Positions 29,836 to 64,000 of a DNA stretch of 64,000 nucleotides are shown here, piece by piece; within the stretch, counting starts at the first letter, position 1; each line of letters starts with the position of its first letter. The stretch lies in assembly GCA_950097015.1 (NCBI GenBank), contig CATNEN010000007.1:7564001-7628000 (forward strand), given 5' to 3'. The notes beneath the pieces are model-generated. The model did no database searches and was not told where the DNA came from. It was given only the letters and a program-made list of their open reading frames with translations. A program made the position numbers and the translations under genes. This DNA comes from Macrostomum hystrix (lineage: Eukaryota > Animalia > Platyhelminthes).

Positions 29836-30269
29836 TACTTCCAGTCTCTACTGGAACTACTTACTGGCCTCTTCGTACAACGAGTACATATAGTCGTAGA
29901 TGTAGACTTATATTAGGAAAAAATTTTTCGATTTGTTTCAAATCAATGAACAGTTGAAATCAAATAAGCAAAAAGGGTATGAATTATTTTTGGTTAGAGA
30001 ATAGTTACTTTATTTTCCGATTTTTCCGCATTTATTTATAATCAGTATGCACTTTAAACATATACAATATGATCTGTTCATCGCAATGCTTAAACACTTA
30101 ATCAGGCAAATTTGAAATTGAAAATTGCAAAAGTCATGGAAATTTAGGATTTAAGCACAGTTTGGATTGCACTGCTGTAATCATGTAATGCTGCAGCCAT
30201 GCCCAGCTCACACATATGTCTATGGGCTAAACCGATTTGTCTTGGCAGTTTATGGTTGACCTCGATTTC

Positions 30270-31405
30270 AAGATGTGGGTTCGTGCTTCGATTCTAGATG
30301 TGGGTTCCTGCTTCGATTCTAGATGTGGGTTCGTGCTTCGATTCTAGATGTGTGGTTCCTGCTTCGATTCTAGATGTGGGTTCGTGCTTCGATTCTAGAT
30401 GTGTGGTTCCTGCTTCGATTCTAGATGTGGGTTCGTGCTTCGATTCTAGATGTGGGTTCGTGCTTCGATTCTAGATGTGGGTTCGTGCTTCGATTCTAGA
30501 TGTGTGGTTCCTGCTTCGATTCTAGATGTGTGGTTCCTGCTTCGATTCTAGATGTGTGGTTCCTGCTTCGATTCTAGATGTGGGTTCGTGCTTCGATTCT
30601 AGATGTGGGTTCGTGCTTCGATTCTAGATGTGGGTTCGTGCTTCGATTCTAGATGTGGGTTCGTGCTTCGATTCTAGATTTGGTTTCCTGCTTCGATTCT
30701 AGATGTGGGTTCGTGCTTCGATTCTAGATGTGGGTTCGTGCTTCGATTCTAGATGTGGGTTCGTGCTTCGATTCTAGATGTGGGTTCGTGCTTCGATTCT
30801 AGATGTGGGTTCCTGCTTCGATTCTAGATGTGTGGTTCCTGCTTCGATTCTAGATGTGTGGTTCCTGCTTCGATTCTAGATGTGGGTTCGTGCTTCGATT
30901 CTAGATGTGGGTTCGTGCTTCGATTCTAGATGTGGGTTCGTGCTTCGATTCTATATGTGGGTTCGCGCTTCGATTCTAGATGTGGGTTCGTGCTTCGATT
31001 CTAGATGTGGTTTCCTGCTTCGATTCTAGATGTGGGTTCGTGCTTCGATTCTAGATGTGGGTTCGTGCTTCGATTCTAGATGTGGGTTCGTGCTTCGATT
31101 CTAGATGTGGGTTCGTGCTTCGATTCTAGATGTGGGTTCGTGCTTCGATTCTAGATGTGGGTTCGTGCTTCGATTCTAGATGTGGGTTCGTGCTTCGATT
31201 CTAGATGTGGGTTCGTGCTTCGATTCTAGATGTGGTTTCCTGCTTCGATTCTAGATGTGGGTTCGTGCTTCGATTCTAGATGTGGGTTCGTGCTTCGATT
31301 CTATATGTGGGTTCGCGCTTCGATTCTAGATGTGGGTTCGCGCTTCGATTCTAGATGTGTGGTTCCTGCTTCGATTCTAGATGTGGGTTCCTGCTTCGAT
31401 GTGGG
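30270..31405. repeat. 25/26-bp minisatellite
   Basis: Unit GATGTGGGTTCGTGCTTCGATTCTA. Confidence 0.97.
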
Positions 31406-32213: not shown

Positions 32214-35200
32214 TCACCTGGCGCCGCCAGCAGGTGGGTTGTGATTTCGGCGATGATGATGCAGGTGATGGGGCCGCCGCGACTGGTCCAGGCCAGCCGA
32301 GTTCTGTCGATTTGCGCCCCTGCCGTGGCTCTCCACCATCTGGTAGAACTGGATTTTGTTCTGCAAGCCAACAGTGATTGTTAAATGCTCTTGCTTCAGG
32401 TTTCGACCTGCTCTACTTATAGTAGCCTAAGAAGCCTTGGCATTTTTTTCGCAGAATCTAGGAAAATAATGCATGCGCATAACCGCAAACAAAACAATAC
32501 TTGGCGAGAGTAGCATTGTTTTTCGTTGCCTACCGTCGCGAAGGCCTCAAAGTCCCGTCAAGTGCTCCGAATTTCGGACACAACTGCTGTTTTCGTGCCA
32601 TGGTCGGAGTCGTTGTTCGTGAGATGACTTTTGCATGATAATATCGGGCGATAACATCTGGCCTTCCACGGGCTTTACAGGAACGCTAAGTGAGGATAAA
32701 CTCGTAGAAATTCTGGAGGGAGGTTGGCCGCAGAGGGACGACGGGAGGGTGGTCGCGGAGGGTGGCTGAGGAGCGAGGTTGGCTGCGGAGTGAGGTTGGC
32801 TGCGGAGTGAGGTTGGCTGCGGAGGGAGGTTGGCTGCGGAGGGAGGTTGGCTGCGGAGGGAGGTTGGCTGCGGAGGGAGGGTTGTTACGCCCCACTTTAA
32901 AAGCTAGTTTCGGAGGTTACTGAGGTAAAGCTTAGTCATGAAAAAACTGTGAGTTTAGTTGCGGAGGAGTGGGTAAATATTATATTGAGTGTCGAAAAGA
33001 TGCATGCAGCAGCAGCAGCAGCAGTGACGATAGCTATACAGCATGCACGAGTACGGTGGATGTCCTCCTGGCGTTGGCAATCTCAAGCGCCTTCTTGTGC
33101 CACTCCTTCTTTTTATTGAGCCACTCCTGGCAAAGGTAGGCGAGCGGAGGGTGGGGGGAAGTCGGTGGGCTGGCGTTAGAAGGGCCGGTTTGTCAGTACA
33201 GATGCGGTGAGTAGAGTAAGCTAAGATGGCGCAAAGAAGCTGTAAGTGTTAGAACCCAGTGTCAGTCTCACGTGCTGCTTGCCTAGCTCATGTTGACGTT
33301 TGGACGGGTTATTTCAGCAATCTAATTCAGCGATTTGGCATGCGGAAGAAAAAGGTTCTCAAACTACGAATTCTCTGCAAAGCTAATTGCTAACACCCGC
33401 CAAATGAAAACAGTTCATGCTTAATTCCAGCAATCCAAGAGCTGCGTACCCTAGGCATTAGTTAACTAGTTAACAAGCGCTATCGCAGTTTGTTAATTGT
33501 ACAATAAAAAGTACATAGAATATTTTGTACGCCTGTCAATTTGTCTCAATGCCAAGTTTGTACCCAAATCACAGCTGGGAGAACTGGTGCTCAACGGTCC
33601 AATTGGTTCATAGAATGATCGATAGCTTTGAGATTCTTTGAGATGTTGCAGCTGCGGTAACCCACAAATGCCGACTCACCTTGTACTCGCGATCTTTATT
33701 GCGCATTTCCCGCCGTCTGCGACACGCCTGCAATATTTGAGAATGCGAGAACCTTAGTGAGACCCTTGAGCTAATTGGGTGTGGATCAGCACAGTTCTTC
33801 TGATCTTTCATTATTAACTATTTCAGAAAAAGCCTCTCTTGTTCCTCCACCTCCTCTTCTCGATCCTTCATTCTCTTCCTCTAAAGAAAACTCTCATCAT
33901 TGCCCAACGACTGTCAAAAAAAGCTTTTGTTTTAAAAAATTGATTTCGAGTAGCTCTTTTCGTATTCTAATGCACACAGACAAGGAATTCCCTTCCAATC
34001 ATAATGTACACTGACAAGAAATTCCCTTCCAATCATAATGTAAACAAACAAGGAATTCCCTTCCAATCATAATGTACGCAGACAAGAAATTCCCTTCCAA
34101 TCATAATGTACACAGACAAGAAATTCCCTTCCAATCATAATGTACACAGACAAGAAATTCCCTTCCAATCATAATGTACACAGACAAGAAATTCCCTTCC
34201 AATCATAATGTACACTGACAAGGAATTCCCTTCCAATCATAATGCACGCAGACAAGGAATTCCCCTCCAATCATAATGTACACAGACAAGGAATTCCTTT
34301 CCAATCATAATGTAAACAAACAAGGAATTCCCTTCCAATCATAATGTACGCAGACAAGAAATTCCCTTCCAATCATAATGTAAACAAACAAGGAATTCCC
34401 TTCCAATCATAATGTACACAGACAAGAAATTCCCTTCCAATCATAATGCACGCAGACAAGGAATTCCCTTCCAATCATAATGTACACAGACAAGGAATTC
34501 CCTTCACATCAAAATGCAGAGCGACAAGGAATTATTCTAAGATCAGATGAGCTTTATCACACCATCGAGGAATTACCTAACTTTTTATGCATACCATCAA
34601 GGACTCCCCACACATCCTAATGTGCGCCGTCAAGGTATTTTTCCGGTTCTCATAGCCAAACAAGCCCTTCTAGAATCGTGGAAATTCGCTCAGTGATTGC
34701 GGCGCCACTCACGTCATAATACAGCCAGAAGATGAAGATGACATGCGCCAGCACGTAGAGAACACTGAAGCTGATGAAGACGTCCTTCTCGATCTTGTTC
34801 ACCATCTCCATGCGGCGCAGGTGCCGGTTGCACGGCTCACCAGACTCGGCCTGGAGGAAGCAGTCCCGCATGGAATGAAAGCTCTCGCTGCCGCCGGCGC
34901 CGCCGCCGCCGCCTCGTGCGCCTCCGCCGCCGCCTTGAGTTCCGTTGACTCGGCCGACGGCGCTGCCGAGATTCGGCGGCTGGATCATGGTGACCACCGC
35001 GTGCCAGATGCTCACAATGCAGAGAATAGGCCAGTGACATGAGCACGTACTTGTCCTGCAGGGTTTGGTGGGAGCGGCCGGACAGTCCCGGGTTGTTGTT
35101 TTTCACCAGGAAATGAGTCGGAGGAAAATATGAAACGGAACAAAATATGCACGTGATCTCGGGCCGTCAAGCCTGACTGCATGTCAGTCAGCTAGATTTG

Positions 35201-38200
35201 AGTGACAGCTCCTTTGTCATTCTCAATTTTCATTCTGTCCTTTAGTTTTCATATCTTCATTGAGCTAAGATGAAAATGTTCTGTGTCTTTATTTTTCCCC
35301 ATTTCTAGCAGCCCGTTCTTTGCAAATTCGTGCTGCCCCTTATCTTCTAAAAAATTACCTTTATCTGTAGATTTAAGTCCCACCTATTTTGCAGTAGCTT
35401 TTCTCTCTAGTTTTACCTGTCTATTCAACCTCTTTTTATCCCTATTTGTCCACGCCACATAAGCGAGTCATTTTAAGAACTCCTGATTGCTGATTCATCC
35501 TGATCTCAGCCTCTCTTTGGCACCTCCGTCGGGCCGGTCAGACACGCCACCTCGCCACCTCGACCTGCTAGTGAGCTGGTGGGCCGCGGGGGGGGGGTTG
35601 CGCCGCTGCTGCAGCTACTGCTGCGCCCCCCCCCCCGCAACCGCCTACCCTCCTCCCTGAACTTGGGGTCTCTAAAGGGGGGAAAACAACTTGTGTTCTT
35701 GAGCCATTTTTATACCGGTTGTGTGTGTCAGACCAGATGCAAACTGACCGATTGAGTAGAGAGAAAGCAAGAAGAAACCAGAGACCGGACCGCTGCTCCG
35801 GGGATGGGGGGCGGGTGCGGAGTTCGTGTGTGGCCCTGACCGCTAGCTAATTTTATAACGACCAACTAATCTATGAGAACCTTTGAAGCGGCCATTCTAC
35901 CTCGAAACCGTGTGACACTCCATGCAGCGGCAACGAGATTGATTGGACACATTTTGGCTCGAGCCAACTTACAGGGAATTTGGGAAGGCGAGAACACGAA
36001 AAGGGGTGAGAGTGAGGGGCACAGAATGGGCCGAGAGCGGCAGCAGACTGGAAAGAAGATCAAAAGAGAAAAACGCGGCGGCAGAAGAGGGACTGATTGA
36101 GGATTATGGGCGACTTTTGCTCCAGAGAGCGGTGTGTGAGGGTCGGGTCGACAAACTCTGACACGCGAAGCTTTTTTAATCTCTCCCCTGTCTCCTCTCT
36201 CCCCTGTCTCATCTCTCCCCTGTCTCCTCTCTCCCCTGTCTCATCTCTCCCCTGTCTCATCTCTCCCCTGTCTCATCTCTCCCTGTCTCATCTCTCCCCT
36301 GTCTCATCTCTCCCCTGTCTCATCTCTCCCCTGTCTCATCTCTCCCCTGTCTCATCTCTCCCTGTCTCATCTCTCCCCTGTCTCATCTCTCCCCTGTCTC
36401 ATCTCTCCCCTGTCTCATCTCTCCCCTGTCTCATCTCTCCCCTGTCTCATCTCTCCCCTGTCTCATCTCTCCCCTGTCTCATCTCTCCCCTGTCTCATCT
36501 CTCCCTGTCTCATCTCTCCCCTGTCTCATCTCTCCCCTGTCTCATCTCTCCCCTGTCTCCTCTCTCCCCTGTCTCATCTCTCCCCTGTCTCATCTCTCCC
36601 CTGTCTCATCTCTCCCCTGTCTCATCTCTCCCCTGTCTCCTCTCTCCCCTGTCTCATCTCTCTTCCCTGTCTCATCTCTCCCCTGTCTCATCTCTCCCCT
36701 GTCTCATCTCTCCCCTGTCTCATCTCTCCCCTGTCTCATCTCTCCCCTGTCTCATCTCTCCCCTGTCTCATCTCTCCCCTGTCTCATCTCTCCCCTGTCT
36801 CATCTCTCCCCTGTCTCATCTCTCCCCTGTCTCATCTCTCCCCTGTCTCATCTCTCCCCTGTCTCATCTCTCCCCTGTGTCATCTCAATGAATCGTACAT
36901 GAGGTTTGTTATATTGCTCCCAAGTATTTTCCGATGTTTCCGATGTCCGAATGTTTAGATTTCTCTGTTGGGATTCTTATCGGGGGATGGGAGGTAAGGA
37001 TTTATTGTCTATGGCCCGCCCCGCCCGGCAGCAGCGGCGCCCAGCCCCCCCCCATCGGCCCAGGCCAGCTTACCATGTAGGTGAGGTAGGAGATGCGCGG
37101 CAGCGACTGAGCCACAACGTACTTGAAGGTGACGCTGGTCAGCACCAGGGTGAAGCTCAGCCGTAGGCGGTGCTCGCATTTGTGCGGCTCCACAGCGAAG
37201 GTCGCGAAGGACAGGCCCGAGATCATGAACTGCCGGTTGAGGGAGGGTTGCCAGGGCGGAGCAGAGTCAGTGCTCTGAGCTCACCAACTCACCATGTAAG
37301 TCAAGTAGGAGATCTTGGGCAGGGACTGGTTGATAACAAACTTGAAGGCCACCGAGGTGAGGAACAGTGTGAAGGACAGCTGCAGCCGGGCCTCCGGCTT
37401 GTCAGCGGCGACTGCGAAGGTGGCGAACGACAGGCCAGTTATGAAGAACTGAAATGCCGCGGCGATGGAGGGAGAGAGCGGGCGAGACGGCCGCAGGTTG
37501 GCCGCTGGGGTTTTGGGCAACGGTTGGCAGCCTTCTCTCCTAGATGGCAGCCTTCTACTCCTAGATGGCAGCCTTCTACTCCTAGATGGCAGCCTTCTAC
37601 TCCTAGATGGCAGCCTTCTACTCCTAGATGGCAGCCTTCTCTCCTAGATGGCAGCCTTCTACTCCTAGATGGCAGCATTCTACTCCTAGATGGCAGCCTT
37701 CTACTCCTAGATGGCAGCCTTCTCTCCTAGATGGCAGCCTTCTACTCCTAGATGGCAGCATTCAACTCCTAGATGGCAGCCTTCTACTCCTAGATGGCAA
37801 CCTTCTACTCCTAGATGGCAGCCTTCTACTCCTAGATGGCAGCCTTCTACTCCTAGATGGCAGCATTCTACTCCTAGATGGCAGCCTTCTACTCCTAGAT
37901 GGCAGCCTTCTACTCCTAGATGGCAGCCTTCTCTCCTAGATGGCAGCCTTCTACTCCTAGATGGCAGCATTCTACTCCTAGATGGCAGCCTTCTACTCCT
38001 AGATGGCAGCCTTCTACTCCTAGATGGCAGCCTTCTACTCCTAGATGGCAGCCTTCTACTCCTAGATGGCAGCCTTCTACTCCTAGATGGCAGCCTTCTA
38101 CTCCTAGATGGCAGCCTTCTACTCCTAGATGGCAGCATTCTACTCCTAGATGGCAGCCTTCTACTCCTAGATGGCAGCATTCTACTCCTAGATGGCAACT

Positions 38201-38751
38201 ATCTATTCTTCAAAGACTACTGTTCATCCAATTCATTTTATTCATGCTACATTCAAGCCCATCTTGCTTTGCACTAACAAGAATATTCTATTTGCAAGTC
38301 CTGGATTTTTGTAAATGTTCTCTGCTAGTGAGTCGGCGTCAGCTTTGCCCTGACTTCGCATCCCCGGAGGCGTTGCTGTCGGCATATTCTCACAGAACGG
38401 AAGCTACGGATACTCGTACACCAACAGACGGCGGTTGATTAGTCAGCCGCGGCAACCTCCAGTGCGTCCCATTGGGCTGGCAGTGAGGTTGCCGGGGGAG
38501 AGACAACTCGGCGCACAAGCCGAACACGCGGAAAAATCTGTGATGCTCTTAACATTCTGACACACTCTCACGCACACACGGATCGCGGCCAGACCCTGAC
38601 ATTTGCACTTTCCCCCGGCGCACACAACCGGGCAGTCACACTGTAGCAGTCCCTGCTGATGCCAGCTGCCTACCAGTGCGCCAGCTAAAACTCTTCTAAA
38701 CTGCAGATTTTTATGGGCAAATCTGGATATGAAATTGCGAGTAATTTAGGA

Positions 38752-38788
<37 letters not shown>

Positions 38789-41700
38789 GAAAGCACGCAT
38801 TATTAGGTATCTTTATCGCACTAAAAAAACTCCAGTCAAGCATAGACTGGAACAACACGTAACCCTTAACAGAGGAGCAGGCAACCCTCAACAGAGGAGC
38901 AGGCAACCCTCAACAGAGGAGCAGGCAACCCTCAACAGAGGAGCAGGTAACCCTCAACAGAGGAGCAGGCAACCCTCAACAGAGGAGCAGGTAACCCTCA
39001 ACAGAGGAGCAGGTAACCCTCAACAGACGAGCAGGTAACCCTCAACAGACGAGCAGGTAACCCTCAACAGAGGAGCAGGCAACCCTCAACAGAGGAGCAG
39101 GAGAGGAGCGCCATGAGCATCCAGAAAAACCTGGAGGCGCTTTATAGGGTGCAGGGCAGAGCCTGTCGTATGACGCTGGGCGCCCCACCCTCCACTCCCT
39201 TCGAAGGCATGAATGCTTTCCTCAACGCTACACCCATTGACATTTTCGTCAAGGGGGAAGCAGCAAAGTCCACCCGTCGTCTCCTTGATGCGGGTGTCTC
39301 TTTCCAGAATTCGCGAGCCTTCTCGAAGCGCTCCCTTCTGCCTCACTCTGACCTCTGCCTGAAAACTCTGGGCGAGTGCGGAGGGCTCACCATCCTTTCG
39401 GACGGGGCCCCGGCCACTTTACTCCGGAGCCACAGGTACAAAGTCAGCATCTCCCCTCGTAATGAGGTAAAGGACTGCTGGGATGACCCGGCAGTCCACT
39501 GTTACACTGACGGCTCTCTGATGAATGGTAATTCGGGATTCGGAGTGTGCGTCGCCTCGGGTGGTGAGGTCCTCTGGACCCACTCCCAATACTGTGGCAA
39601 GAGCTCTAGCGTTTTCCAAAACGAAGTGCTCGCCATCAGCTTCTGTGCGGCTGAGCTGCGCCAGAGGCAACTGGCTGGTCGGAGGATCTTCTTTCACTCC
39701 GACAGTCAAGCAGCCCTCAAGGCCCTCAGCCGCTGCACCTCTCGCTCCAGAACCACCTTGGACTGCAACACCCAGTTAAACGGGCTGGCGCAGTCTAACA
39801 AGGTGGAGCTGTTGTGGATCCCTGGGCATGCCGGGTTCACAGGGAATGAGATGGCGGACCAGCTCGCTAAGGCTGGAGCAGCCAGCTCCCTGATGGGCCC
39901 GGGCCCGGAGTCCCCGATCCCCGTCTCTGATGTCAACTCCAGCATCAACCGCTGGATGCAGACCCAGCACCGGAGGAGGTGGTCCAGCACCCTGAACTGT
40001 CGCCAGTCCAGGGCTGCGGTGCCAACCCCCTCTAGAAACCTGCGTAAGGCCTTACTCAGGCTTAACCGCAGAGACCTAAGAGCAGTCACTATGGCCCTTT
40101 CGGGACATGGCTGTTTCACCAGACACCGCTACCTTCAAGGCCACGTGCCTGAGGAAACGTGTCCCTTCTGCTGCTCCGGTCGTGAAAATGCCGAGCATTT
40201 CAACTGCCACTGCCCGGCCTTCACCCGGGCTAGGCTAAAACATCTCGGCCGGCACCGACTCTTGCCGAAGCCTGCTCGCCCGAGAACATCCCACAGCTCG
40301 CCCACTTCCTCCGGGATACCGGCCGAGCTGATTTCTTCCCAGCCTATGGCGAAGAAGATCGCGCGGCGGAATCGACCGACGGAACACCCTGAGCGGCACC
40401 GCCTCGCTGGAGGCTGTCTGGCTGCCAGGGGTTAGCGATATGGGCGGCATCAGCCGCCTACTCGCTGCGTCCGTCATGGAGGCTCCCTGCCGCTAAGTCA
40501 AGTAAGTCAAGAGGAGCAGGCAACCCTCAACAGAGGAGCAGGCAACCCTCAACAGAGGAGCAGGCAACCCTCAACAGAGGAGCAGGCAACCCTCAACAGA
40601 GGAGCAGGTAACCCTCAACAGAGGAGCAGGCAACCCTCAACAGAGGAGCAGGTAACCCTCAACAGAGGAGCAGGTAACCCTCAACAGAGGAGCAGGTAAC
40701 CCTCAACAGAGGAGCAGGTAACCCTCAACAGAGGAGCAGGTTACCCTCAACAGAGGAGCAGGTAACCCTCAACAGAAGAGCAGGCAACCCTTAACAGAGG
40801 AGCAGGTAACCCTCAACAGAGGAGCAGGCAACCCTCAACAGAGGAGCAGGCAACCCCAACAGGCAGGGCAGGCAGCACTAACCATGATGAGGAAGACATT
40901 CCAGTAGAAGTAGCCGGGTCTGCGGGCCGCCCTGCAGCGCACAGCGAGGCACGGATGCGACTTCATGGTGCTGGAGAATTCCTGAGTCAGGGTGCGCTTC
41001 TCAACCTCAATGTGCTCATGCAGGCGCCACTCCTGCTGGTCGACGAACGTCTGGATGTTGATGCCGCTCATTTCCGCCTCGTCCGGAATTAACTCAATCT
41101 CCGTGTCCGGCCTCTCCGAGGTGATGGTGATGGTCAGGTCCTGGGGGTTCATTGTATCCAATTGCATAGCATTTGATAGTTGAATGGAACCTGAGAATCG
41201 TGCTCAGTATATCTGCTGACCTGCACATCCAACGGGAAGTCGTTCAGCTCGAGGGTTTCCAAGAAAACGCCTTTAATCCTTCGCCTCTCCACAATGTAGA
41301 CGTCTGAGTTGAGCGGATCGTGCTGCGCCACCACCCAGGTGGCCTCCTTGGTCTCGCTCAGGATGTTGTCAATGTACAGCAGCGGATTCCAGTACTTCTC
41401 CAGGTCGACGCTTTTCAACTCCTGGATCGAGGAGGTTCGTAGATTTCGTGCACTTTTAGAAGCAAAAATTTCGGATTTTTTTTGGTAGGTTTAGTTGGCT
41501 CCACGGAAAACAATTCGAAATGTCAGCAGCAGGCCATCTGGAGAAGTCGCACTCAAGGTCATCAAGCTTGACAAATTGATCCCAGAGTACAAGCTCAGAA
41601 CTGGGGAGTGACTCGCTGTGACAGCCGCATCCTCTAACGAGTTAATTCCGAATCCTCGCTTTTACGAGTAATCTGGCCTTTCTAAGGGCCATACTTATTA

Positions 41701-41926: not shown

Positions 41927-44900
41927 TAGCAGCTCTATACAAACATTGTGCGAGCGGGGGGCGGACATGGTCCACAGCAGAGCAATACTGTGTTAGCACT
42001 TTGCGTTTAGCTAACAAAATAGGGAGTCGGGAACACGACTGTCGGGTAAAAGAAGCCTAGTTGGGGACGGCGTTGGCTGGGATCTCAACAGGCGCCAATA
42101 GTTCTCAGCTGTGCTAGGGCAAAAACTGCTAATTGCACGCCTACTGCTGATCCTATTCACGCTGCTGGATCTGGGTGTCTGTCTGTTCTGGGTGTCTGTC
42201 TGTTCTGGGTGCCTGTCTGTTCTGGGTGCCTGCCTGATCTGGGTGCCTGCCTGATCTGGTTGTCTGCCTGTTCTGGGTGTCTGTCTGTTCTGGGTGTCTG
42301 TCTGTTCTAGGTGTCTGTCTGTTCTGGGTGCCTGCCTGATCTGGTTGTCTGCCTGTTCTGGGTGTCTGTCTGTTCTGGGTGCCTGCCTGTTCTGGGTGCC
42401 TGCCTGATCTGGGTGTCTGCCTGTTCTGGGTGCCTGCCTGATCTAGGTGTCTGTCTGTTCTGGGTGCCTGCCTGATCTGGGTGTCTGCCTGTTCTGGGTG
42501 TCTGTCTGTTCTGGGTGTCTGTCTGTTCTGGGTGTCTGCCTGTTCTGGGTGTCTGCCTGTTCTGGGTGTCTGTCTGTTCTGGGTGTCTGTCTGTTGTGGG
42601 TGTCTGCCTGTTCTGGGTGCCTGCCTGTTCTGGGTGTCTGTCTGTTCTGGGTGTCTGTCTGTTCTGGGTGTCTGCCTGTTCTGGGTGTCTGCCTGTTCTG
42701 GGTGTCTGTCTGTTCTGGGTGTCTGTCTGTTCTGGGTGTCTGTCTGTTCTGGGTGTCTGTCTGTTCTGGGTGCCTGCCTGTTCTGGGTGTCTGCCTGTTC
42801 TGGGTGTCTGTCTGTTCTGGGTGTCTGTCTGTTCTGGGTGTCTGCCTGTTCTGGGTGCCTGGCTGATCTGGTTGTCTGCCTGTTCTGGGTGTCTGTCTGT
42901 TCTGGGTGTCTGTCTGTTCTGGGTGCCTGCCTGATCTGGGTGTCTGCCTGTTCTGGGTGCCTGCCTGATCTGGGTGTCTGTCTGTTCTGGGTGCCTGCCT
43001 GATCTGGGTGTCTGCCTGTTCTGGGTGTCTGTCTGTTCTGGGTGTCTGTCTGTTCTGGGTGTCTGCCTGTTCTGGGTGTCTGTCTGTTGTGGGTGTCTGT
43101 CTGTTGTGGGTGTCCGTCTGTCTGTCTGTCTGTTCAGGTTACTGTATTTTTCAAAGGCTTAGAAATCTGAAATCAAGCCAGAGTGAAGGAAAGGTTGAGC
43201 AGACAGTTTGAGCATGCTTCAAATCGATAGGCAATAAATTTTTACAAGGCCATTGGTTCGACCTGCAGTCACTTCAAAATGAAAAAAGACCAATAATTCT
43301 CCCCCCCAATCGAGTGGATCTGCGAGCAGAAACGGAAAGAAATACTATCCTACGTTCATTTTATTCTCCCGGGAACTTTCTCGGCATTCCTGGGACATGC
43401 GCATGTCTTTGTTCGTCTTGACACAATATTCCCACCTTCCAGGCCTCTCCATTCTCTCACTCACCTCGGCGCCTCGGCCCTCCAATAGCGGCTCCTTCCA
43501 CTTGGCCTGGATGAAGGCGTCGGCGTGGTACAGCTCCTTGAGCGTGTCGATCTCGCCGATCTTCAGGAACACCACGCGAATTTCCACGACGACCTTTTCG
43601 TGGAATCAGAAATTAGTTTAAGTTAATTGGGGGCCAAGCTGTTCCTAAGAATACCCCTCTCACACTGTCTTACAGCTGGTGTCACTGTCGCTCTGTCCCT
43701 CCATCATTCTGTCACTCGATCATTCTGTCACTCGATCATTCTGTCACTCATTCACTCTGTTACTCTGTGACTCCTCCACTCTGTCACTCTGTCACTCTGT
43801 CACTCATTCACTCTGTCACTCTGTCACTCATTCACTCTGTCACTCTGTCACTCTGTCACTCTGTCACTCTGTCACTCTGTCACTCATTGACTCATTCACT
43901 CTGTCACTCATTCACTCTGTCACTCTGTCACTCTGTCACTCATTCACTCTGTCACTCTGTCACTCTGTCACTCTGTCACTCATTCACTCTGTCACTCTGT
44001 CACTCATTCACTCTGTCACTCTGTCACTCATTCACTCTGTCACTCTGTCACTCATTCACTCTGTCACTCTGTCACTCATTCACTCTGTCACTCTGTCACT
44101 CATTCACTCTGTCACTCTGTCACTCATTCACTCTGTCACTCTGTCACTCATTCACTCTGTCACTCTGTCACTCATTCACTCTGTCACTCTGTCACTCATT
44201 CACTCTGTCACTCTGTCACTCATTCACTCTGTCACTCTGTCACTCATTCACTCTGTCACTCTGTCACTCTGTCACTCATTCACTCTGTCACTCCTTGAGA
44301 CACGGCCGGTCTCTGTCTCTCTGTACTCAGCAATAATTATTCTACCGCTTCGCCGAAAGAGATACGGAGGAACGGCAGAAAAGTCTGCTAGCAAACTTAT
44401 TAGAACAAAATGATATGCAAGAACCGGATGCTCAATATGCTCAAAAACCAATATTTGCTTGGCCAAAAACTCTTCATCTCCCGCAAAAACCGAGGGAAAT
44501 TTTTTCCTTCAAAAGACCCACGCCGACATCAAAAGGCCTACTGGCGCTGTTGTTGGGAATAGAATTGACAACCCAAATCCTCATCGCGACCTCGACTCCC
44601 GTCCACAGTATATTTGCAATTGGGAAGAAAGAATGAGGACAGTCTCGCAGCACAGGAATAGGATTCCAGGATTATCATCTCCCACTTGAGCTTCAGCCCA
44701 CGGACTGAGCATATTAGATAGGCAAATTACGATTAAACAAACAGAATATGCGGCATCGGGTCAACTTAAACCCCAACTATTGGTTTGCTTTTCAAACGGA
44801 TTGTTTTGCTGAAATTCTCCGACCGAAATCCAGAAAATTTTGCAGCTTCTACAGCAATGTGAATTGTATGGCTGCAATGTATTGTAATTGTGCGTGTTGT

Positions 44901-46719
44901 AACTGCGTGAGTTGTAACTGCGTGAGTTGTAACTGCGTGAGTTGTAACTGCATGAGTTGTAACTGCGTGAGTTGTAACTGCATGAGTTGTAACTGCATGA
45001 GTTGTAACTGCGTGAGTTGTAACTGCATGAGTTGTAACTGCATGAGTTGTAACTGCATGAGTTGTAACTGCATGAGTTGTAACTGCATGAGTTGTAACTG
45101 CATGAGTTGTAACTGCATGAGTTGTAACTGCATGAGTTGTAACTGCATGAGTTGTAACTGCATGAGTTGTAACTGCGTGAGTTGTAACTGCGTGAGTTGT
45201 AACTGCGTGAGTTGTAATCATGTGTGTTGTAATTTTGTATTTTAACTGTGAGTGTGTGAGTGTGTGTAGGTGTGTGTGAGTGTGTGTAGGTGTGTGTGAG
45301 TGTGTGTAGGTGTGTGTGAGTGTGTGTAGGTGTGTGTGAGTGTGTGTAGGTGTGTGTGTGAGTGTGTGTAGGTGTGTGTGAGTGTGTGTAGGTGTGTATG
45401 TCAAAGCGAATGCAGGGCAGCAATGTCCCCAGCTGGATTTAGCCGGAGAGAAAATTAAGCAGAAAAGCAACTCATCGCGCGTTTCGGCTCTAAATTTTTT
45501 ATGTGCCCACTCGGGGATTAGCGGGTAATCCGTCGCGCCCCGAGCCCCTGGCTCTCTGCATACGGATGAATTCTTTGCGTGCTCAAAATTAGCATGGAGC
45601 ATGAGCTCAAAAGGGAACTCACTGAGGCGGGGTCAACAGCCCCGGACTGAGCACTTGAAGTGAGACAAATAACAGCATTGCGAGCACCAAAGGCGTCCGT
45701 GTGATTGAACAAATTGAAATTACGAGAAGTAGCAGATTGACGTGAGATTTTGAGTAGAGACCGGTTGATGCTCTAGGTCGACGAGAGATGTGGGTGAATT
45801 CTAGAAAACTAGAATAATATTCTGAGTGACAAAAATGATACTCCAAATTGGGATTTTGAGAAGACGAAATGGGATTTTGAGTATAGAAAGCAAGATGCTG
45901 AAAAGAGAAATTAAAGTTTTGAGAATAGGAAGTAAGAATTTAGGAAAGGAAGTGAGATTTCGAGGAAAAATGTCAGATCTTCGGTGGAGAAAGTGCGATA
46001 AAATACATAATAGCTCGTAACTATTACAAACCCTCACAAGAGGCAGGGATTGAAATTGCCTGCGACTATTTCCAGGAAAAAAATCGGCCGCCTCACCTTC
46101 TCGGCCCGTATGCGGCAGCGCTCGTCGCTCTTGAGGCCGCCGCCCTTGTAGTTGACCTGGCCGGCCGAGGTGCCCCTCCGCCTGTTGCGCACGCGGCTCT
46201 GCTGCATCGCCACGCTGGTGCTGTCGTTGATGGAGTCGCGCAGCGTCTCCAGGGCGTCGATGAGCCGCTGCGTCGGGTCCAGCGAGGCGGAAGCGATGCC
46301 GCCGGTTGCCACGGAGCCGGAGCAAAGCCCGGACGGGCCGGCCCGCTCCGAAGCGGAGGCGGTGATGACAGCGGCGCGTCCGGACCCGGCCGCCTCGGTG
46401 GTGGCCGCCGACGAGGAGGCGGCACGCAGGAGGCCGCGGTTTCGAATCCCGCGACAGGCCGTCTGGGTCGGAGCCCGCTGCTGCTGGTACAGCGGGTGCT
46501 GCTGCTGCTGCTGCTCAGGCCGGGGGTCGTCCGGCTCGTCGTGAGCATTGAGGAACTCGGTGGAGTTGAAGTCGCCGCTGTTGTTGGACTGGCAGTCGTC
46601 GTCAGTGTCAACGGCGTGGTAGCCGGCGTCCTTGTGTGAGGGAGCGATGAGGCGGGATTCGAGTTCAGGATCTCGGGGTCAGATTGCGGTCTCAGATACA
46701 GCTCGACCTCATTGGTCAT
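32214..46719 (-). CDS. Cys-less (Pro-loop) pentameric ligand-gated ion channel subunit
   Basis: Exons ~46719-46097, 43593-43465 (VVVEIRVVFLKIGEIDTLKELYHADAFIQAKWKEP), 41421-41221 (YWNPLLYIDN...GVFLETLELNDFPLDVQ, no Cys-loop cysteines), 41140-40883 (...ARRPGYFYWNVFLIM), 37448-37293 or 37229-37074 (M1-M2), 35055-34713 (M3-M4), 33728-33681 and terminal ~32360-32214; all phase 0 GT-AG. Apparent 1-nt frameshifts at ~46676 and ~35028. Confidence 0.9.
32715..32880. repeat. 17-bp minisatellite
   Basis: Unit GGAGGGAGGTTGGCTGC. Confidence 0.88.
33968..34532. repeat. 34-bp minisatellite in channel intron
   Basis: Unit ACAGACAAG(A/G)AATTCCCTTCCAATCATAATGTAC. Confidence 0.95.
36181..36886. repeat. 16-bp pyrimidine-rich minisatellite in channel intron
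   Basis: Unit TCTCATCTCTCCCCTG. Confidence 0.96.
37074..37229 (-). CDS. Channel M1-M2 exon, alternative copy b
   Basis: 156 nt, CAG|...|GTAAGC; FMISGLSFATFAVEPHKCEHRLRLSFTLVLTSVTFKYVVAQSLPRISYLTYM. Confidence 0.9.
37293..37448 (-). CDS. Channel M1-M2 exon, alternative copy a
   Basis: 156 nt, TTTCAG|...|GTGAGT; FFITGLSFATFAVAADKPEARLQLSFTLFLTSVAFKFVINQSLPKISYLTYM. Confidence 0.9.
37525..38200. repeat. 21-bp minisatellite
   Basis: Unit TCCTAGATGGCAGCCTTCTAC. Confidence 0.96.
38860..40862. repeat. 22-bp minisatellite split by retrotransposon insertion
   Basis: Unit GAGGAGCAGG(C/T)AACCCTCAACA at 38860-39101 and 40510-40862. Confidence 0.95.
39102..40510 (+). mobile_element. 5'-truncated non-LTR retrotransposon (RNase H + Cys/His knuckle, LOA-like), antisense in channel intron
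   Basis: 440-aa ORF with HCYTDGS, SVFQNEVLAI, HSDSQAALKAL, WIPGHAGFTGNEMADQLAKAG, CPFCC..ENAEHFNCHC. Tail TAAGTCAAGTAAGTCAA. AGAGGAGCAGG on both sides (39091-39101, 40510-40520) is consistent with a TSD. Confidence 0.93.
42168..43135. repeat. 17-bp minisatellite
   Basis: Unit GTCTG(T/C)CTGTTCTGGGT. Confidence 0.96.
43705..44292. repeat. 8-bp satellite with 24-bp higher-order unit
   Basis: CTCTGTCA CTCTGTCA CTCATTCA. Confidence 0.95.
44895..45398. repeat. 15-bp minisatellite followed by GT-rich ~20-bp repeat
   Basis: GAGTTGTAACTGC(A/G)T to ~45230, then GTGTGTGAGTGTGTGTAGGT. Confidence 0.95.
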
Positions 46720-62065: not shown

Positions 62066-64000
62066 TGGGACTCAATCTCATTGCAGAGAAATGATCTCAG
62101 ATGGCATGCAGGGGGAAGGCTTTGAACAGGCCAAACCCACGGTTGTGCAAGAGTTGCCCAGGTCCTCAGGTAAGTGACAAATCGTGTTCCAAGTCTGCCT
62201 CTAGCGGAAGACGGATCGGTTGGGCGGGTAATGGCAAATTTTCTGCTGAATTTTTCAGGTCGATAAAAGAAAGATTCTGACGGAGTTGAACCGGCAAAAA
62301 GTCCAGTTAGAAATTGGCAAATCACTTTCGATCATTTCTGATTGAATTTTTAGTCCAGAATTACCGACATTTTTTAATTAACGCTCTGTTGGGAAAAAAG
62401 GAGAATTGGTCAGGGTTGGGAGAGTTTCCACCTCAGTGAACTTCAACTCGAGTGGCGTTCTGGTTTAACATGCTTGTGGAAATAATTTAGTTTTGTTAGT
62501 CAATGCGAATTTGTTAGTGAGGCCAAGAGCCAGCTGATAGAAAAAACTATAGAATCTGCATCTATGAGGGCCTTGGATACAGGTTGTGGAATAGTGTAGC
62601 AAGGATGACGCATTCTGCAGGCGGGCAGGCGGGCAGGCGGTGTGGTGCACTTACATAATAGGACATGGAAGCCGGCAGCTGGCGTTTCGGCCTGTCGTTG
62701 CCGCTGCTTGACCTCTTTGGCACCTTTCCGTAGGCCAGCATGGACCTTGAGAAGTTCATTCGCTAAGCCGCTAGCTGCACTGGCAGGCTGGCTTAGCGGG
62801 TCTCGCGGAGTTGGAGCAAGGTGTGGGGCAGTGGAAGCCTCGCCTGATTGGCTGAGCGCCTCAGTAGGTCTCGTGAAGTTTGATGGCACGAGGTGGGGGG
62901 AGGGTCTCGCGGAGTGAGGTGGGGCACAGGAGGCTTCTCTGATTGGCTGGGGTGGACCAGTGGCCAATTAAGACAAATATGACCAGTGGATTAAGGGTAG
63001 GTGTAAGACCCTTAAGGCAGTCAATGAGAGTACGAGAGACTCCAGACACGCAGTGTTAGCAGATTAAAATAGAACTCTGAACATCCGCCCCTAAATCTAG
63101 CAGCTGCGAGGACTCGCCTGGTATGGCGCGCTGGTGACCACCCGTCGTAGTTGGATGAAGGTGCTGGGCGCGTTCATGCTGTTGTCCCAGGCTTCAAAGC
63201 CGTTTTCAATGACAGACTTTTGCAATTGGAACAGCTTGGCCTTCTGTGTTGGCCGCGTGGAGAGGGGCAGCAGACGGATCAGATTGTGTGCGCGGAAGTG
63301 AAACTGCAACCGAGAAGCAAAGTATGAATCCGGACACATAAGCCTGGATGCCGATTGCAATCGGATGGGGGTCTGAATGGTGGGCCAGGGGGGCCAGACA
63401 CAGCCAGCCAATTGGAGGCGGGGCAGCAGGGTATGGGCCGGCAACTCTTGTCCTGCATCCGGAGCCCGGCCACCATGCTGGAAGGGCGGAGGCGAGAGAC
63501 AGAGAGATGTCGGCAGTCATGTGCTGGGTCGCTGGTCACTGAGGCGGCAACAGATTTGGACGGCCGATTGCCCCGATCTCAGCGGCTCTTCGGCTGGGCG
63601 TGCTGGAGGAGGGGGGAAGCAATTAGCAAGTAATCCCAGCATAAACTGATCGATTTATTTATGGCTCCGAGCTGGGCATGGCAACCAGGGCGAGTTTGAG
63701 CAGAGAAAGAATGGGGGGAAAAGATGCAGAGCTGTGAATGAGCGTGAAAGAGAGAAAGATGCAGAAAAAAGACGATTAAGTTTAACGTGAAAATGTCACT
63801 TTGACTCCGAGTTATGGGCGGTGAATATTACAGAATAGATATTTCGTGAACGATGAAGAGCGCCATTTGATGGGAGCTTCTCAGTTTGAGCATTCCGCCA
63901 TGGTCGAGTGTCAATTATTCTCAGAAATTCTCTTCCCGGAGCAGATTTCGCAGCCAAAAATTGGCAGGGATTCTCGGGATTGCCGGGGAATGCGTCCGGC

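What the first reader, a model, noticed from the sequence alone, without database searches (positions are those of the whole stretch)
37074..37448. Tandemly duplicated pore exon: mutually exclusive M2 variants in a Cys-less pLGIC
Seen: two intact 156-nt phase-0 exons, 63 nt apart, each with its own splice sites. Each encodes the end of M1, the M1-M2 loop, M2 and the M2-M3 loop. They are heavily diverged at synonymous sites but conserved in protein, so both appear to be under selection. Including both would duplicate M2 and break topology. Differences fall on pore positions (R=0'): loop AADKPEA vs EPHKCEH, -1' A/H, 2' Q/R, 13' A/T, 16' F/Y. Known: -2' to 2' set charge selectivity in pLGICs, and exclusive TM2 exons occur in insect nAChR alpha6. 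Inference: one orphan Cys-less gene switches selectivity, conductance or pH/metal sensitivity by splicing.
Basis: partly seen in the sequence, partly recalled or inferred. Interest (0 to 1): 0.85.

Follow-up and report, generated by a model that had tools for sequence, protein, structure and literature searches.

The report
Alternative pore exons in flatworm channel
A free-living flatworm (Macrostomum) ion-channel gene carries two interchangeable copies of the exon that lines the pore. RNA data show it makes messages with one copy or the other, so one gene yields two channel subunits that parasitic flatworms encode as two separate genes.

Summary
On the minus strand, 37448-37293 (A) and 37229-37074 (B) are two 156-nt phase-0 exons, 63 nt apart, each with AG/GT sites. 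They share 73% protein and 69% DNA identity.

They encode the end of M1, the M1-M2 loop, M2 and the M2-M3 loop of a 'Cys-less' pentameric ligand-gated channel. The assembly size matches Macrostomum hystrix.

Public transcript contigs show exon5|A|exon7 and exon5|B|exon7 in the same run. No contig joins A to B.

A second, old gene copy on contig C11 keeps both exons (dS about 1, dN/dS about 0.02 for each). So both exons are under strong purifying selection.

Exon B groups with the M2 of one parasitic-flatworm gene ('g1'). Exon A matches a second gene ('g2'). The A/B split therefore predates the Macrostomum-parasite divergence.

Aligned to ELIC, the differences fall at -1' (A/H), 2' (Q/R), 13' (A/T) and 16' (F/Y). 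The functional effect is untested.

This kind of switch is already known in insect nAChR alpha6 exon 8, so this is a new member of a known kind.

The window has one extra base at 35028, in the M3 exon, that the transcripts lack.

The parts
62655..62759 (-). Coding exon 1 (MNFSRSMLAYGK...SYY). It has no signal-peptide-like stretch. The donor is GTAAGT.
   Evidence: tblastn of M. lignano P0002; sequence read
46097..46630 (-). Exon 2. It encodes a hydrophilic N-terminal extension (178 codons) ending ...RCRIRAEK.
43465..43593 (-). Exon 3, the start of the ligand-binding domain (VVVEIRVVFLKIGEIDTLKE...).
41221..41421 (-). Exon 4, part of the ligand-binding domain. It holds the Pro-loop motif FPLDVQ without flanking cysteines.
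40883..41140 (-). Exon 5, the end of the ligand-binding domain, pre-M1 and the start of M1 (...RRPGYFYWNVFLIM). It is the shared upstream partner of exons A and B.
   Evidence: The loose end TTCTACTGGAATGTCTTCCTCATCAT is attached to both A and B contigs.
37449..40882 (-). Intron 5 (3.4 kb). It contains minisatellites (37525-38197, 38861-39101, 40510-40862) and a retroelement RNase H fragment on the + strand (39113-40435). Its last 70 nt or more (37449-37520+) are contiguous with exon A in contigs of X2, X3 and X4.
37293..37448 (-). Exon 6a (A), the ancestral-type M2. Its pore positions are E-2', A-1', R0', Q2', T6', L9', A13', F16'.
37230..37292 (-). The 63-nt intron between A and B. The only yTnAy branch-site match (CTGAC) lies about 25 nt from the donor. 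No transcript contig covers this intron.
   Evidence: The branch-site reading is by eye.
37074..37229 (-). Exon 6b (B), the derived-type M2. Its pore positions are E-2', H-1', R0', R2', T6', L9', T13', Y16'.
34713..35055 (-). Exon 7 (M3, the M3-M4 loop and M4). It is the shared downstream partner of A and B. The window has one extra base at 35028 (T on the minus strand) that shifts the frame. Transcript contigs and the C11 copy lack it.
33680..33727 (-). Exon 8, the conserved basic post-M4 motif ACRRRREMRNKDREYK.

Best explanation
Exons 6a and 6b are a pair of mutually exclusive, homologous cassette exons in a Macrostomum (by assembly size, M. hystrix) gene for a 'Cys-less' pentameric ligand-gated channel subunit. 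Each mature mRNA joins exon 5 (start of M1) to either A or B and then to exon 7 (M3-M4). One gene therefore produces two subunits. They have identical ligand-binding domains, M3 and M4. They differ in the M1-M2 loop and in the pore-lining residues -1', 2', 13' and 16'.

Shown here:
- both spliced forms exist in RNA;
- both exons are under strong purifying selection in two old gene copies;
- the B type is orthologous to the M2 of a separate gene in parasitic flatworms.

Inferred:
- The two forms give channels with different permeation or conductance, mainly through the ring of Arg versus Gln at 2' next to the conserved Glu at -2'.
- Exclusivity is enforced by the very short A-B intron (63 and 66 nt in the two copies). 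This places the likely branch site about 25-30 nt from exon A's donor, too close for that intron to be spliced as a unit (the steric mechanism known from alpha-tropomyosin exons 2/3).
- The pair is the ancestral state. In Neodermata it was resolved into two genes by duplication and reciprocal exon loss.
For: Anatomy.

RNA:
- X3 record 4 is exon A with a 26-nt exon-5 flank and a 23-nt exon-7 flank.
- X3 record 3 is exon B with the same flanks.
- X2 record 1 runs from B into exon 7.
- X4 record 7 runs from A into exon 7.
- No contig covers 37231-37291, and no A-B joint is seen.
- The flanks match the C7 copy and not the C11 copy.

Selection: the C11 copy keeps the whole gene and both exons. For A, C7 versus C11 gives dS 0.95 and dN/dS 0.018. 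For B it gives dS 0.99 and dN/dS 0.017. Introns between the copies are unalignable.

M. lignano gene models also contain both exons.

Deep conservation:
- The exon tree puts Macrostomum B with the M2 of neodermatan g1 (support 100/82).
- Macrostomum A+B as one clade is rejected (p-AU 0.027).
- S. japonicum has both g1 (B type) and g2 (A type).

Pore mapping comes from the ELIC alignment. No other paralogue in the genome has a second M2 exon.

Both skipping and double inclusion stay in frame (156 = 3 x 52), so nonsense-mediated decay cannot enforce exclusivity (from the sequence).
Against: - The evidence is from assembled contigs, not reads. Rare A+B or skipped forms would be dropped, and usage ratios, tissues and stages are unknown.
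- Much of the exon-A signal is contiguous with the upstream intron (X2, X3, X4). In X4 it is the only path into A. Some exon-A RNA may therefore be unspliced precursor or start inside intron 5.
- Flatworms are known (my own knowledge, for schistosomes) to splice very short introns, so a 63-nt intron need not be unspliceable.
- I found no conserved intronic element or competing RNA pairing shared by the two copies.
- No function, ligand or ion selectivity is known for any member of the clade (PMC9874803).
- The window's own exon 7 is frameshifted as assembled.
Confidence: 0.8

Rival explanations
1. The splicing is the same but the logic differs. A and B isoforms are not alternative channels. 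They are obligate partner subunits that co-assemble into one heteropentamer with a mixed Q/R ring at 2'. One gene would then supply both subunits, as C. elegans unc-49 does (my own knowledge) and as the g1 plus g2 gene pair may do in parasites.
For: - Both forms occur in the same run, with similar contig word depth for the exon5|A (6.3) and exon5|B (5.9) paths in X3. The tool warns that depth is a poor measure.
- Trematodes and cestodes both hold a B-type gene and an A-type gene. The two genes are shown together in one species only for S. japonicum.
- Each type is nearly invariant outside the M1-M2 loop across flatworms.
Against: - Nothing shows co-expression in the same cells or co-assembly.
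- X2 and X4 each show only one of the two fully spliced forms. If real, that would fit differential rather than joint use.
Confidence: 0.35
2. One of the two exons is a decaying or non-functional duplicate, and its inclusion is splicing noise.
For: The M. lignano NCBI models use only B. Part of the exon-A RNA retains the upstream intron.
Against: - Both exons are intact.
- Both are kept in two gene copies that are saturated at synonymous sites, with dN/dS about 0.02.
- Both are kept in M. lignano.
- Both types are conserved to parasitic flatworms.
- Both fully spliced forms are present in X3.
Confidence: 0.03
3. Both exons are constitutive and included together, giving a subunit with two M2-like helices. 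This is what the UniProt M. lignano models A0A1I8GSY0 and A0A1I8GBW9 predict.
For: The tandem A+B reading is in frame, and two automatic gene models contain it.
Against: - No contig covers or bridges the A-B intron.
- Both single-exon forms are flanked directly by exon 5 and exon 7.
- A fifth membrane helix would put M3 and M4 in the wrong orientation (established pLGIC topology).
- The A+B models are predictions from an early assembly.
Confidence: 0.03
4. The two spliced forms come from the two gene copies, C7 using one exon and C11 the other, rather than from alternative splicing of one gene.
For: A second copy with both exons exists on C11.
Against: - Contigs match the C7 exons with 0-1 differences, while C7 and C11 exons differ by 15%.
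- Both loose flanks are C7-specific at several positions.
Confidence: 0.02

Closest known systems
Insect nicotinic receptor alpha6 subunit, mutually exclusive exons 8a/8b/8c (Drosophila, Tribolium, Apis and others)
   Same: Tandem homologous alternative exons in a pLGIC gene that replace residues of the pore-lining TM2. Individual variants are conserved across orders (PMC2064938; PMC6393475 and PMC5111602 are listed).
   Different: - It is a Cys-loop, cation-type nAChR in arthropods, so this is an independent origin.
- It has three variants plus a second alternative site (exon 3) and RNA editing.
- Here there are two variants in a Cys-less orphan clade.
- Here the two variants correspond to two separate genes in related lineages.
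Schistosome and flatworm 'Cys-less' LGIC clade (Johnson et al. 2023, PMC9874803; e.g. S. mansoni A0A5K4EMP5; planarian gabrg1/gabrg2)
   Same: - It is the same family. The window's exon 5 is 78% identical to A0A5K4EMP5 (P0006).
- The FPxD loop has no cysteines.
- Glu at -2' is present in both exons.
- The ligand and ion selectivity are unknown.
   Different: That paper describes genes and motifs only, with one (the longest) transcript per gene. No alternative M2 exons are reported. In the parasites' models each gene carries one M2 type.
ELIC (Erwinia pentameric channel), the closest solved structure by sequence (8d67, 2vl0; E about 1e-14)
   Same: Exon A has the same pore-facing residues as ELIC at 2' (Q), 6' (T), 9' (L), 13' (A) and 16' (F). 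Both lack the Cys-loop disulfide.
   Different: ELIC is bacterial, has a signal peptide and lacks the long N- and C-terminal extensions. Exon B departs from it at 2' (R), 13' (T) and 16' (Y).
C. elegans unc-49 GABA receptor locus (my own knowledge, not checked here)
   Same: One gene supplies several pLGIC subunits that share a ligand-binding part and differ in channel-forming parts. The products co-assemble.
   Different: unc-49 swaps whole C-terminal exon sets, not a single cassette exon.
Alpha-tropomyosin exons 2/3 (steric exclusion by a branch point too close to the upstream donor; my own knowledge)
   Same: Two adjacent alternative exons are separated by a very short intron, with the candidate branch site only about 25-30 nt from the donor.
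   Different: The mechanism is not tested here. The flatworm spliceosome may tolerate shorter introns.

Membership tests
[quoted passage not shown] | Ligand-binding domain of the Neur_chan_LBD type | tested here: met
   The orthologue P0002 is 100% identical to the window over exon 5. It scores 31.9 bits against PF02931, above the cut-off of 26. The single exons alone give no LBD hit.
[quoted passage not shown] | Conserved (F/Y)PxD loop with the invariant proline | tested here: met
   FPLDVQ lies at the end of exon 4.
[quoted passage not shown] | Four membrane helices M1-M4, with M2 carrying Leu 9' | tested here: met
   - The alignment to ELIC and GABA-A gamma2 runs through M1, M2 and into M3.
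- M4 (VFISFSVLYVLAHVIFIFWLYY) is identified by hydropathy.
- L9' is present in both exons.
- PF02932 is below cut-off for P0002 (21.1 versus 28.1) but above it for the g2 relative P0018 (39.8).
Flatworm 'Cys-less' LGIC clade (PMC9874803) | No cysteine pair flanking the loop | tested here: met
   The loop region reads VFLETLELNDFPLDVQDLTIT, with no Cys.
Flatworm 'Cys-less' LGIC clade (PMC9874803) | Glutamate at M2 -2' | tested here: met
   A has ...KPEA-R and B has ...KCEH-R, so E is at -2' in both.
Flatworm 'Cys-less' LGIC clade (PMC9874803) | Groups with the schistosome Cys-less sequences in a tree | tested here: met
   Macrostomum, neodermatan g1 (including S. mansoni) and g2 form a clade with support 99/96.
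Mutually exclusive exon pair | Adjacent homologous exons of equal length and phase, each with its own splice sites | tested here: met
Mutually exclusive exon pair | Transcripts with either exon joined to the same flanking exons | tested here: met
   X3 records 3 and 4; the flanks are assigned to the C7 copy.
Mutually exclusive exon pair | Transcripts with both exons, or with neither, are absent or rare | tested here: inconclusive
   No A-B joint and no cover of the A-B intron appear in three runs. These are contigs, which drop rare forms. A skipped form could not be seen on the stretch laid.
Insect nAChR alpha6 | Cys-loop cysteines, vicinal loop-C cysteines and the GEK motif before TM2 | tested here: not met
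   There are no Cys-loop cysteines and no GEK motif. It works like alpha6 exon 8 but is not a member of that family.

The most novel reading that the evidence does not exclude
The whole clade, including this gene, may sit in the membrane the other way round from every studied pLGIC.

Features that fit this reading:
- None of about 35 members has a signal peptide or a membrane segment before the ligand-binding domain.
- All have a 50-300 residue hydrophilic N-terminal extension.
- All have lost the disulfide.
- All carry a conserved, very basic motif (RRRREM.KDREY) plus a hydrophilic tail after M4.

The ligand-binding domain and tail would then be cytoplasmic. The M1-M2 loop, the most divergent part of exons A and B (AADKPEA versus EPHKCEH), would face outside or into a lumen. 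The splice choice would then swap an external His/Cys-rich pore mouth on an internally gated channel.

Separately, the exon pair would be the ancestral form of the two-gene g1/g2 system of flukes and tapeworms.
Probability: 0.25. Interest if true: 0.85.

Novelty: new member of a known kind. Interest (0 to 1): 0.55.

Why it matters
- It is a natural, evolution-tested pair of pore variants on an otherwise identical subunit. The family has no known ligand, selectivity or function. It is absent from vertebrates and has been proposed as an anthelmintic target (PMC9874803).
- Expressing A, B and A+B would show directly what positions -1', 2', 13' and 16' do in this clade.
- Each isoform matches a separate gene in schistosomes, liver flukes and tapeworms. 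The free-living, transgenesis-capable Macrostomum could therefore serve as a one-gene model of the parasites' two-gene system.
- It is a clear case of alternative splicing and gene duplication being interchangeable over deep time.
- The lack of a signal peptide across the clade, if real, would bear on how these channels are oriented and gated.

Tried and rejected
1. Conserved intronic 'docking/selector' elements. blastn-short between the C7 and C11 introns found nothing beyond the exons. A duplex-energy scan gave one signal, the A-B intron against the downstream intron in C7 only (z -3.1), with no counterpart in C11. This gives no support for competing RNA pairing.

Whether g1 and g2 truly have one M2 exon each rests on gene models only.

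3. Order of events. The rest-of-protein tree leaves Macrostomum, g1 and g2 as an unresolved three-way split. g1+g2 has support 79/55, and the alternatives have p-AU 0.27-0.29. 'Ancestral exon pair, later resolved into two genes' is weakly favoured. 'Two ancestral genes, exon captured in Macrostomum' is not excluded.

4. Run X1 (organism A) held a third of the sampled words from exons 4-5 but laid nothing on the A/B stretch.

5. M. lignano entries P0003, P0008 and P0019 looked like transcripts with A only or B only. They are gene predictions from an early, frameshift-rich assembly, so they are not counted as RNA evidence.

6. A third alternative exon or a retrocopy. The genome-wide six-frame search found only the A and B exons of C7 and C11 and single M2 exons of other paralogues.

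7. Literature. I found no report of alternative M2 exons in flatworm LGICs, or of inverted or signal-less pLGICs, in the held library.

8. Joined sequences. The database orthologue P0002 served as the full-length proxy.
Full report
**What is at the coordinates.** On the minus strand there are two 156-nt segments. Segment A is 37448-37293 and segment B is 37229-37074. Each is preceded by a pyrimidine-rich tract and AG, and each is followed by GT(G/A)AG. Both translate without stops into 52 residues. The two peptides are 73% identical. The DNA is 69% identical inside the segments and unalignable outside them. The gap between them is 63 nt. Each peptide alone hits the start of Pfam Neur_chan_memb weakly.

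**The gene and the organism.**
- The 86-codon exon upstream (41140-40883) was searched against 1.8 billion representative proteins. It gave 453 hits, the best at 100% identity.
- Names in the collection show the top hits to be Macrostomum lignano proteins. The next are 'Cys-loop/GABA-like' models of trematodes and cestodes, and further out come molluscs and an annelid.
- The window's genome has 220,453,370 bases in 42 contigs. These are exactly the figures published for the Macrostomum hystrix assembly (PMC10468722).
- The family is the 'Cys-less' LGIC clade described in schistosomes (PMC9874803). That paper names S. mansoni A0A5K4EMP5, which is P0006 in my hit list.
The database orthologue P0002 (PAA66589.1, 663 aa) served as the full-length proxy.
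- tblastn of P0002 on the window gives the exon chain 62759-62655, 46630-46097, 43593-43465, 41421-41221, 41140-40883, A/B, 35055-34713 and 33727-33680, plus a weakly matched last exon.
- P0002 passes the Pfam LBD threshold and aligns to ELIC and GABA-A gamma2 through M1-M3.
- The loop motif is FPLDVQ, without cysteines.

**RNA evidence.** Four public runs of one study hold 81% of the sampled words of exons 4-5. That is close to the exonic share of the stretch searched. Laid on 36900-37520, their contigs are spliced, so they are transcripts.
- In run X3, one contig is exon B and another is exon A. Both carry the same 26 letters behind and 23 letters before.
- Those loose ends are the last bases of exon 5 and the first bases of exon 7. 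They match the C7 copy, not its paralogue on C11.
- X2 has B joined to exon 7.
- X4 has a 940-nt contig with A joined to exon 7.
- Nothing covers the A-B intron or the intron after B, and no A-B joint is listed.
The caveat is that contigs drop rare forms and cannot give ratios.

**Selection.** A six-frame search of the genome finds the A/B pair twice, here and on contig C11. It finds single M2 exons in the other paralogues.
- The C11 gene is complete, with the same exon plan and a 66-nt A-B intron.
- The two copies are saturated at synonymous sites and their introns do not align.
- Even so, exon A differs by one residue between the copies and exon B by none.
- dS is 0.95 for A and 0.99 for B; dN/dS is 0.018 and 0.017.
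- M. lignano gene models also contain both exons, with changes only in the M1-M2 loop.
- Both exons are therefore maintained by selection.

**Deep history.**
- Trematodes and cestodes each show two genes of this group among the species listed. One gene ('g1': Opisthorchis, Schistosoma, Echinococcus, Rodentolepis, Hymenolepis) has a B-type M2. The other ('g2': S. japonicum, S. mekongi, Fasciola, Paragonimus, Mesocestoides, Spirometra) has an A-type M2.
- S. japonicum has both genes.
- The A type is the widespread ancestral form across the clade.
- In a tree of the 52 residues, Macrostomum B and g1 M2 form a clade (support 100/82). Holding Macrostomum A and B together is rejected (p-AU 0.027).
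- A tree of the rest of the protein, with the M2 columns removed, unites Macrostomum, g1 and g2 (support 99/96). It cannot order them.
- The simplest reading is an ancestral A/B exon pair that the parasites later resolved into two genes. The reverse order is not excluded.

**What differs between the isoforms.**
- By the ELIC alignment, R is 0'.
- Exon A has E-2', A-1', Q2', T6', L9', A13' and F16'. From 2' to 16' this is ELIC's own pore-facing set.
- Exon B has E-2', H-1', R2', T6', L9', T13' and Y16'.
- The M1-M2 loop reads AADKPEA in A and EPHKCEH in B.
- The residues that separate the types (Q/R at 2', A/T at 13', F/Y at 16', and others) are fixed within each type from Macrostomum to tapeworms.
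- A change in permeation or conductance is a reasonable inference, but nothing here measures it.
- The parasites keep both gene types, so the two products may be partners in a heteromer rather than alternatives.

**How exclusivity might be kept.** Skipping and double inclusion would both stay in frame, so RNA surveillance cannot be the filter. The only non-coding feature shared by the two copies is the short A-B intron. Its best branch-site match lies about 25-30 nt from the donor (read by eye). This is the arrangement of the classic steric model. I found no conserved intron element or shared RNA pairing. This step is inference.

**Loose ends.**
- The window has an extra base at 35028 that shifts exon 7 out of frame. 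Contigs from two runs, the C11 copy and P0002 all lack it. It is an assembly error or an allele.
- Intron sequence just upstream of exon A is contiguous with exon A in three runs.
- No member of the clade examined has a signal peptide, and all have a basic tail after M4. An earlier first-reader note on another gene of this genome (s1-840780) says the same. I treat it as a lead, not as support.

**Comparison and verdict.** Alternative TM2 exons are established in insect nAChR alpha6. This case is an independent example in a different, uncharacterised pLGIC clade, with RNA support and an unusual evolutionary counterpart. It is a new member of a known kind and of moderate interest.

Noticed in passing
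window 35028 (minus-strand T within GGCC[T]ATTC, exon 7): One extra base shifts the M3-M4 exon from frame 1 to frame 2. Transcript contigs of X2 and X4 read GGCCATTC. The C11 copy and M. lignano P0002 are also in frame. It is probably an assembly indel, or possibly a frameshift allele of the sequenced line.
   Followed up: partly
window 37449-37520 and beyond (intron 5, just upstream of exon A): This intron stretch is contiguous with exon A in contigs of X2, X3 and X4. In X4 a 940-nt contig runs from the minisatellite through exon A and is spliced 37293>35055, with no exon5|A path listed. This could be a retained intron, a slow first step, or a start inside the intron. Nothing comparable is seen upstream of exon B.
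   Followed up: partly
whole protein family (P0002, P0018, P0154 and about 30 others); window exons 62759-62655 and 46630-46097, and 33727-33680: - There is no signal-peptide-like or membrane-like stretch before the ligand-binding domain in any member.
- The N-terminal extension is hydrophilic and 50-300 residues long, with a conserved start (MNFSRSML / MSINFNKLF).
- A conserved basic motif RRRREM.KDREY plus a hydrophilic tail follows M4.
- Together with the missing disulfide, this fits an inverted topology with a cytoplasmic ligand-binding domain.
- The test was a simple hydropathy scan only.
   Followed up: partly
G000 contig C11: 836757-851202 (loci L012-L014): This is a complete second copy of the gene. 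It has the same exon plan, both M2 exons and an intact M3 exon, and it is more compact. It is saturated at synonymous sites against the window's copy. Other paralogues also come in old pairs (C3/C29, C34/C1).
   Followed up: yes
window 39113-40435 (+): A 440-codon open frame with an RNase H domain (E 2e-13) and a weak zf-RVT match lies inside intron 5, on the opposite strand. It is a fragment of a non-LTR-type retroelement.
   Followed up: no
window 30262-31400, 36179-36886, 37525-38197, 42170-43133, 43685-44293, 44896-45217: The gene's introns are packed with long, very regular minisatellites (periods of 15-25 nt, 20-57 copies, 84-98% matches).
   Followed up: no
P0162 (S. mansoni XP_018650424.1): This RefSeq model of the g1 gene joins M1 directly to M3 (…NVFLIM|DKYVLMSLF…). 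It therefore lacks the M2 exon altogether. It is either a mis-prediction or a skipped form.
   Followed up: no
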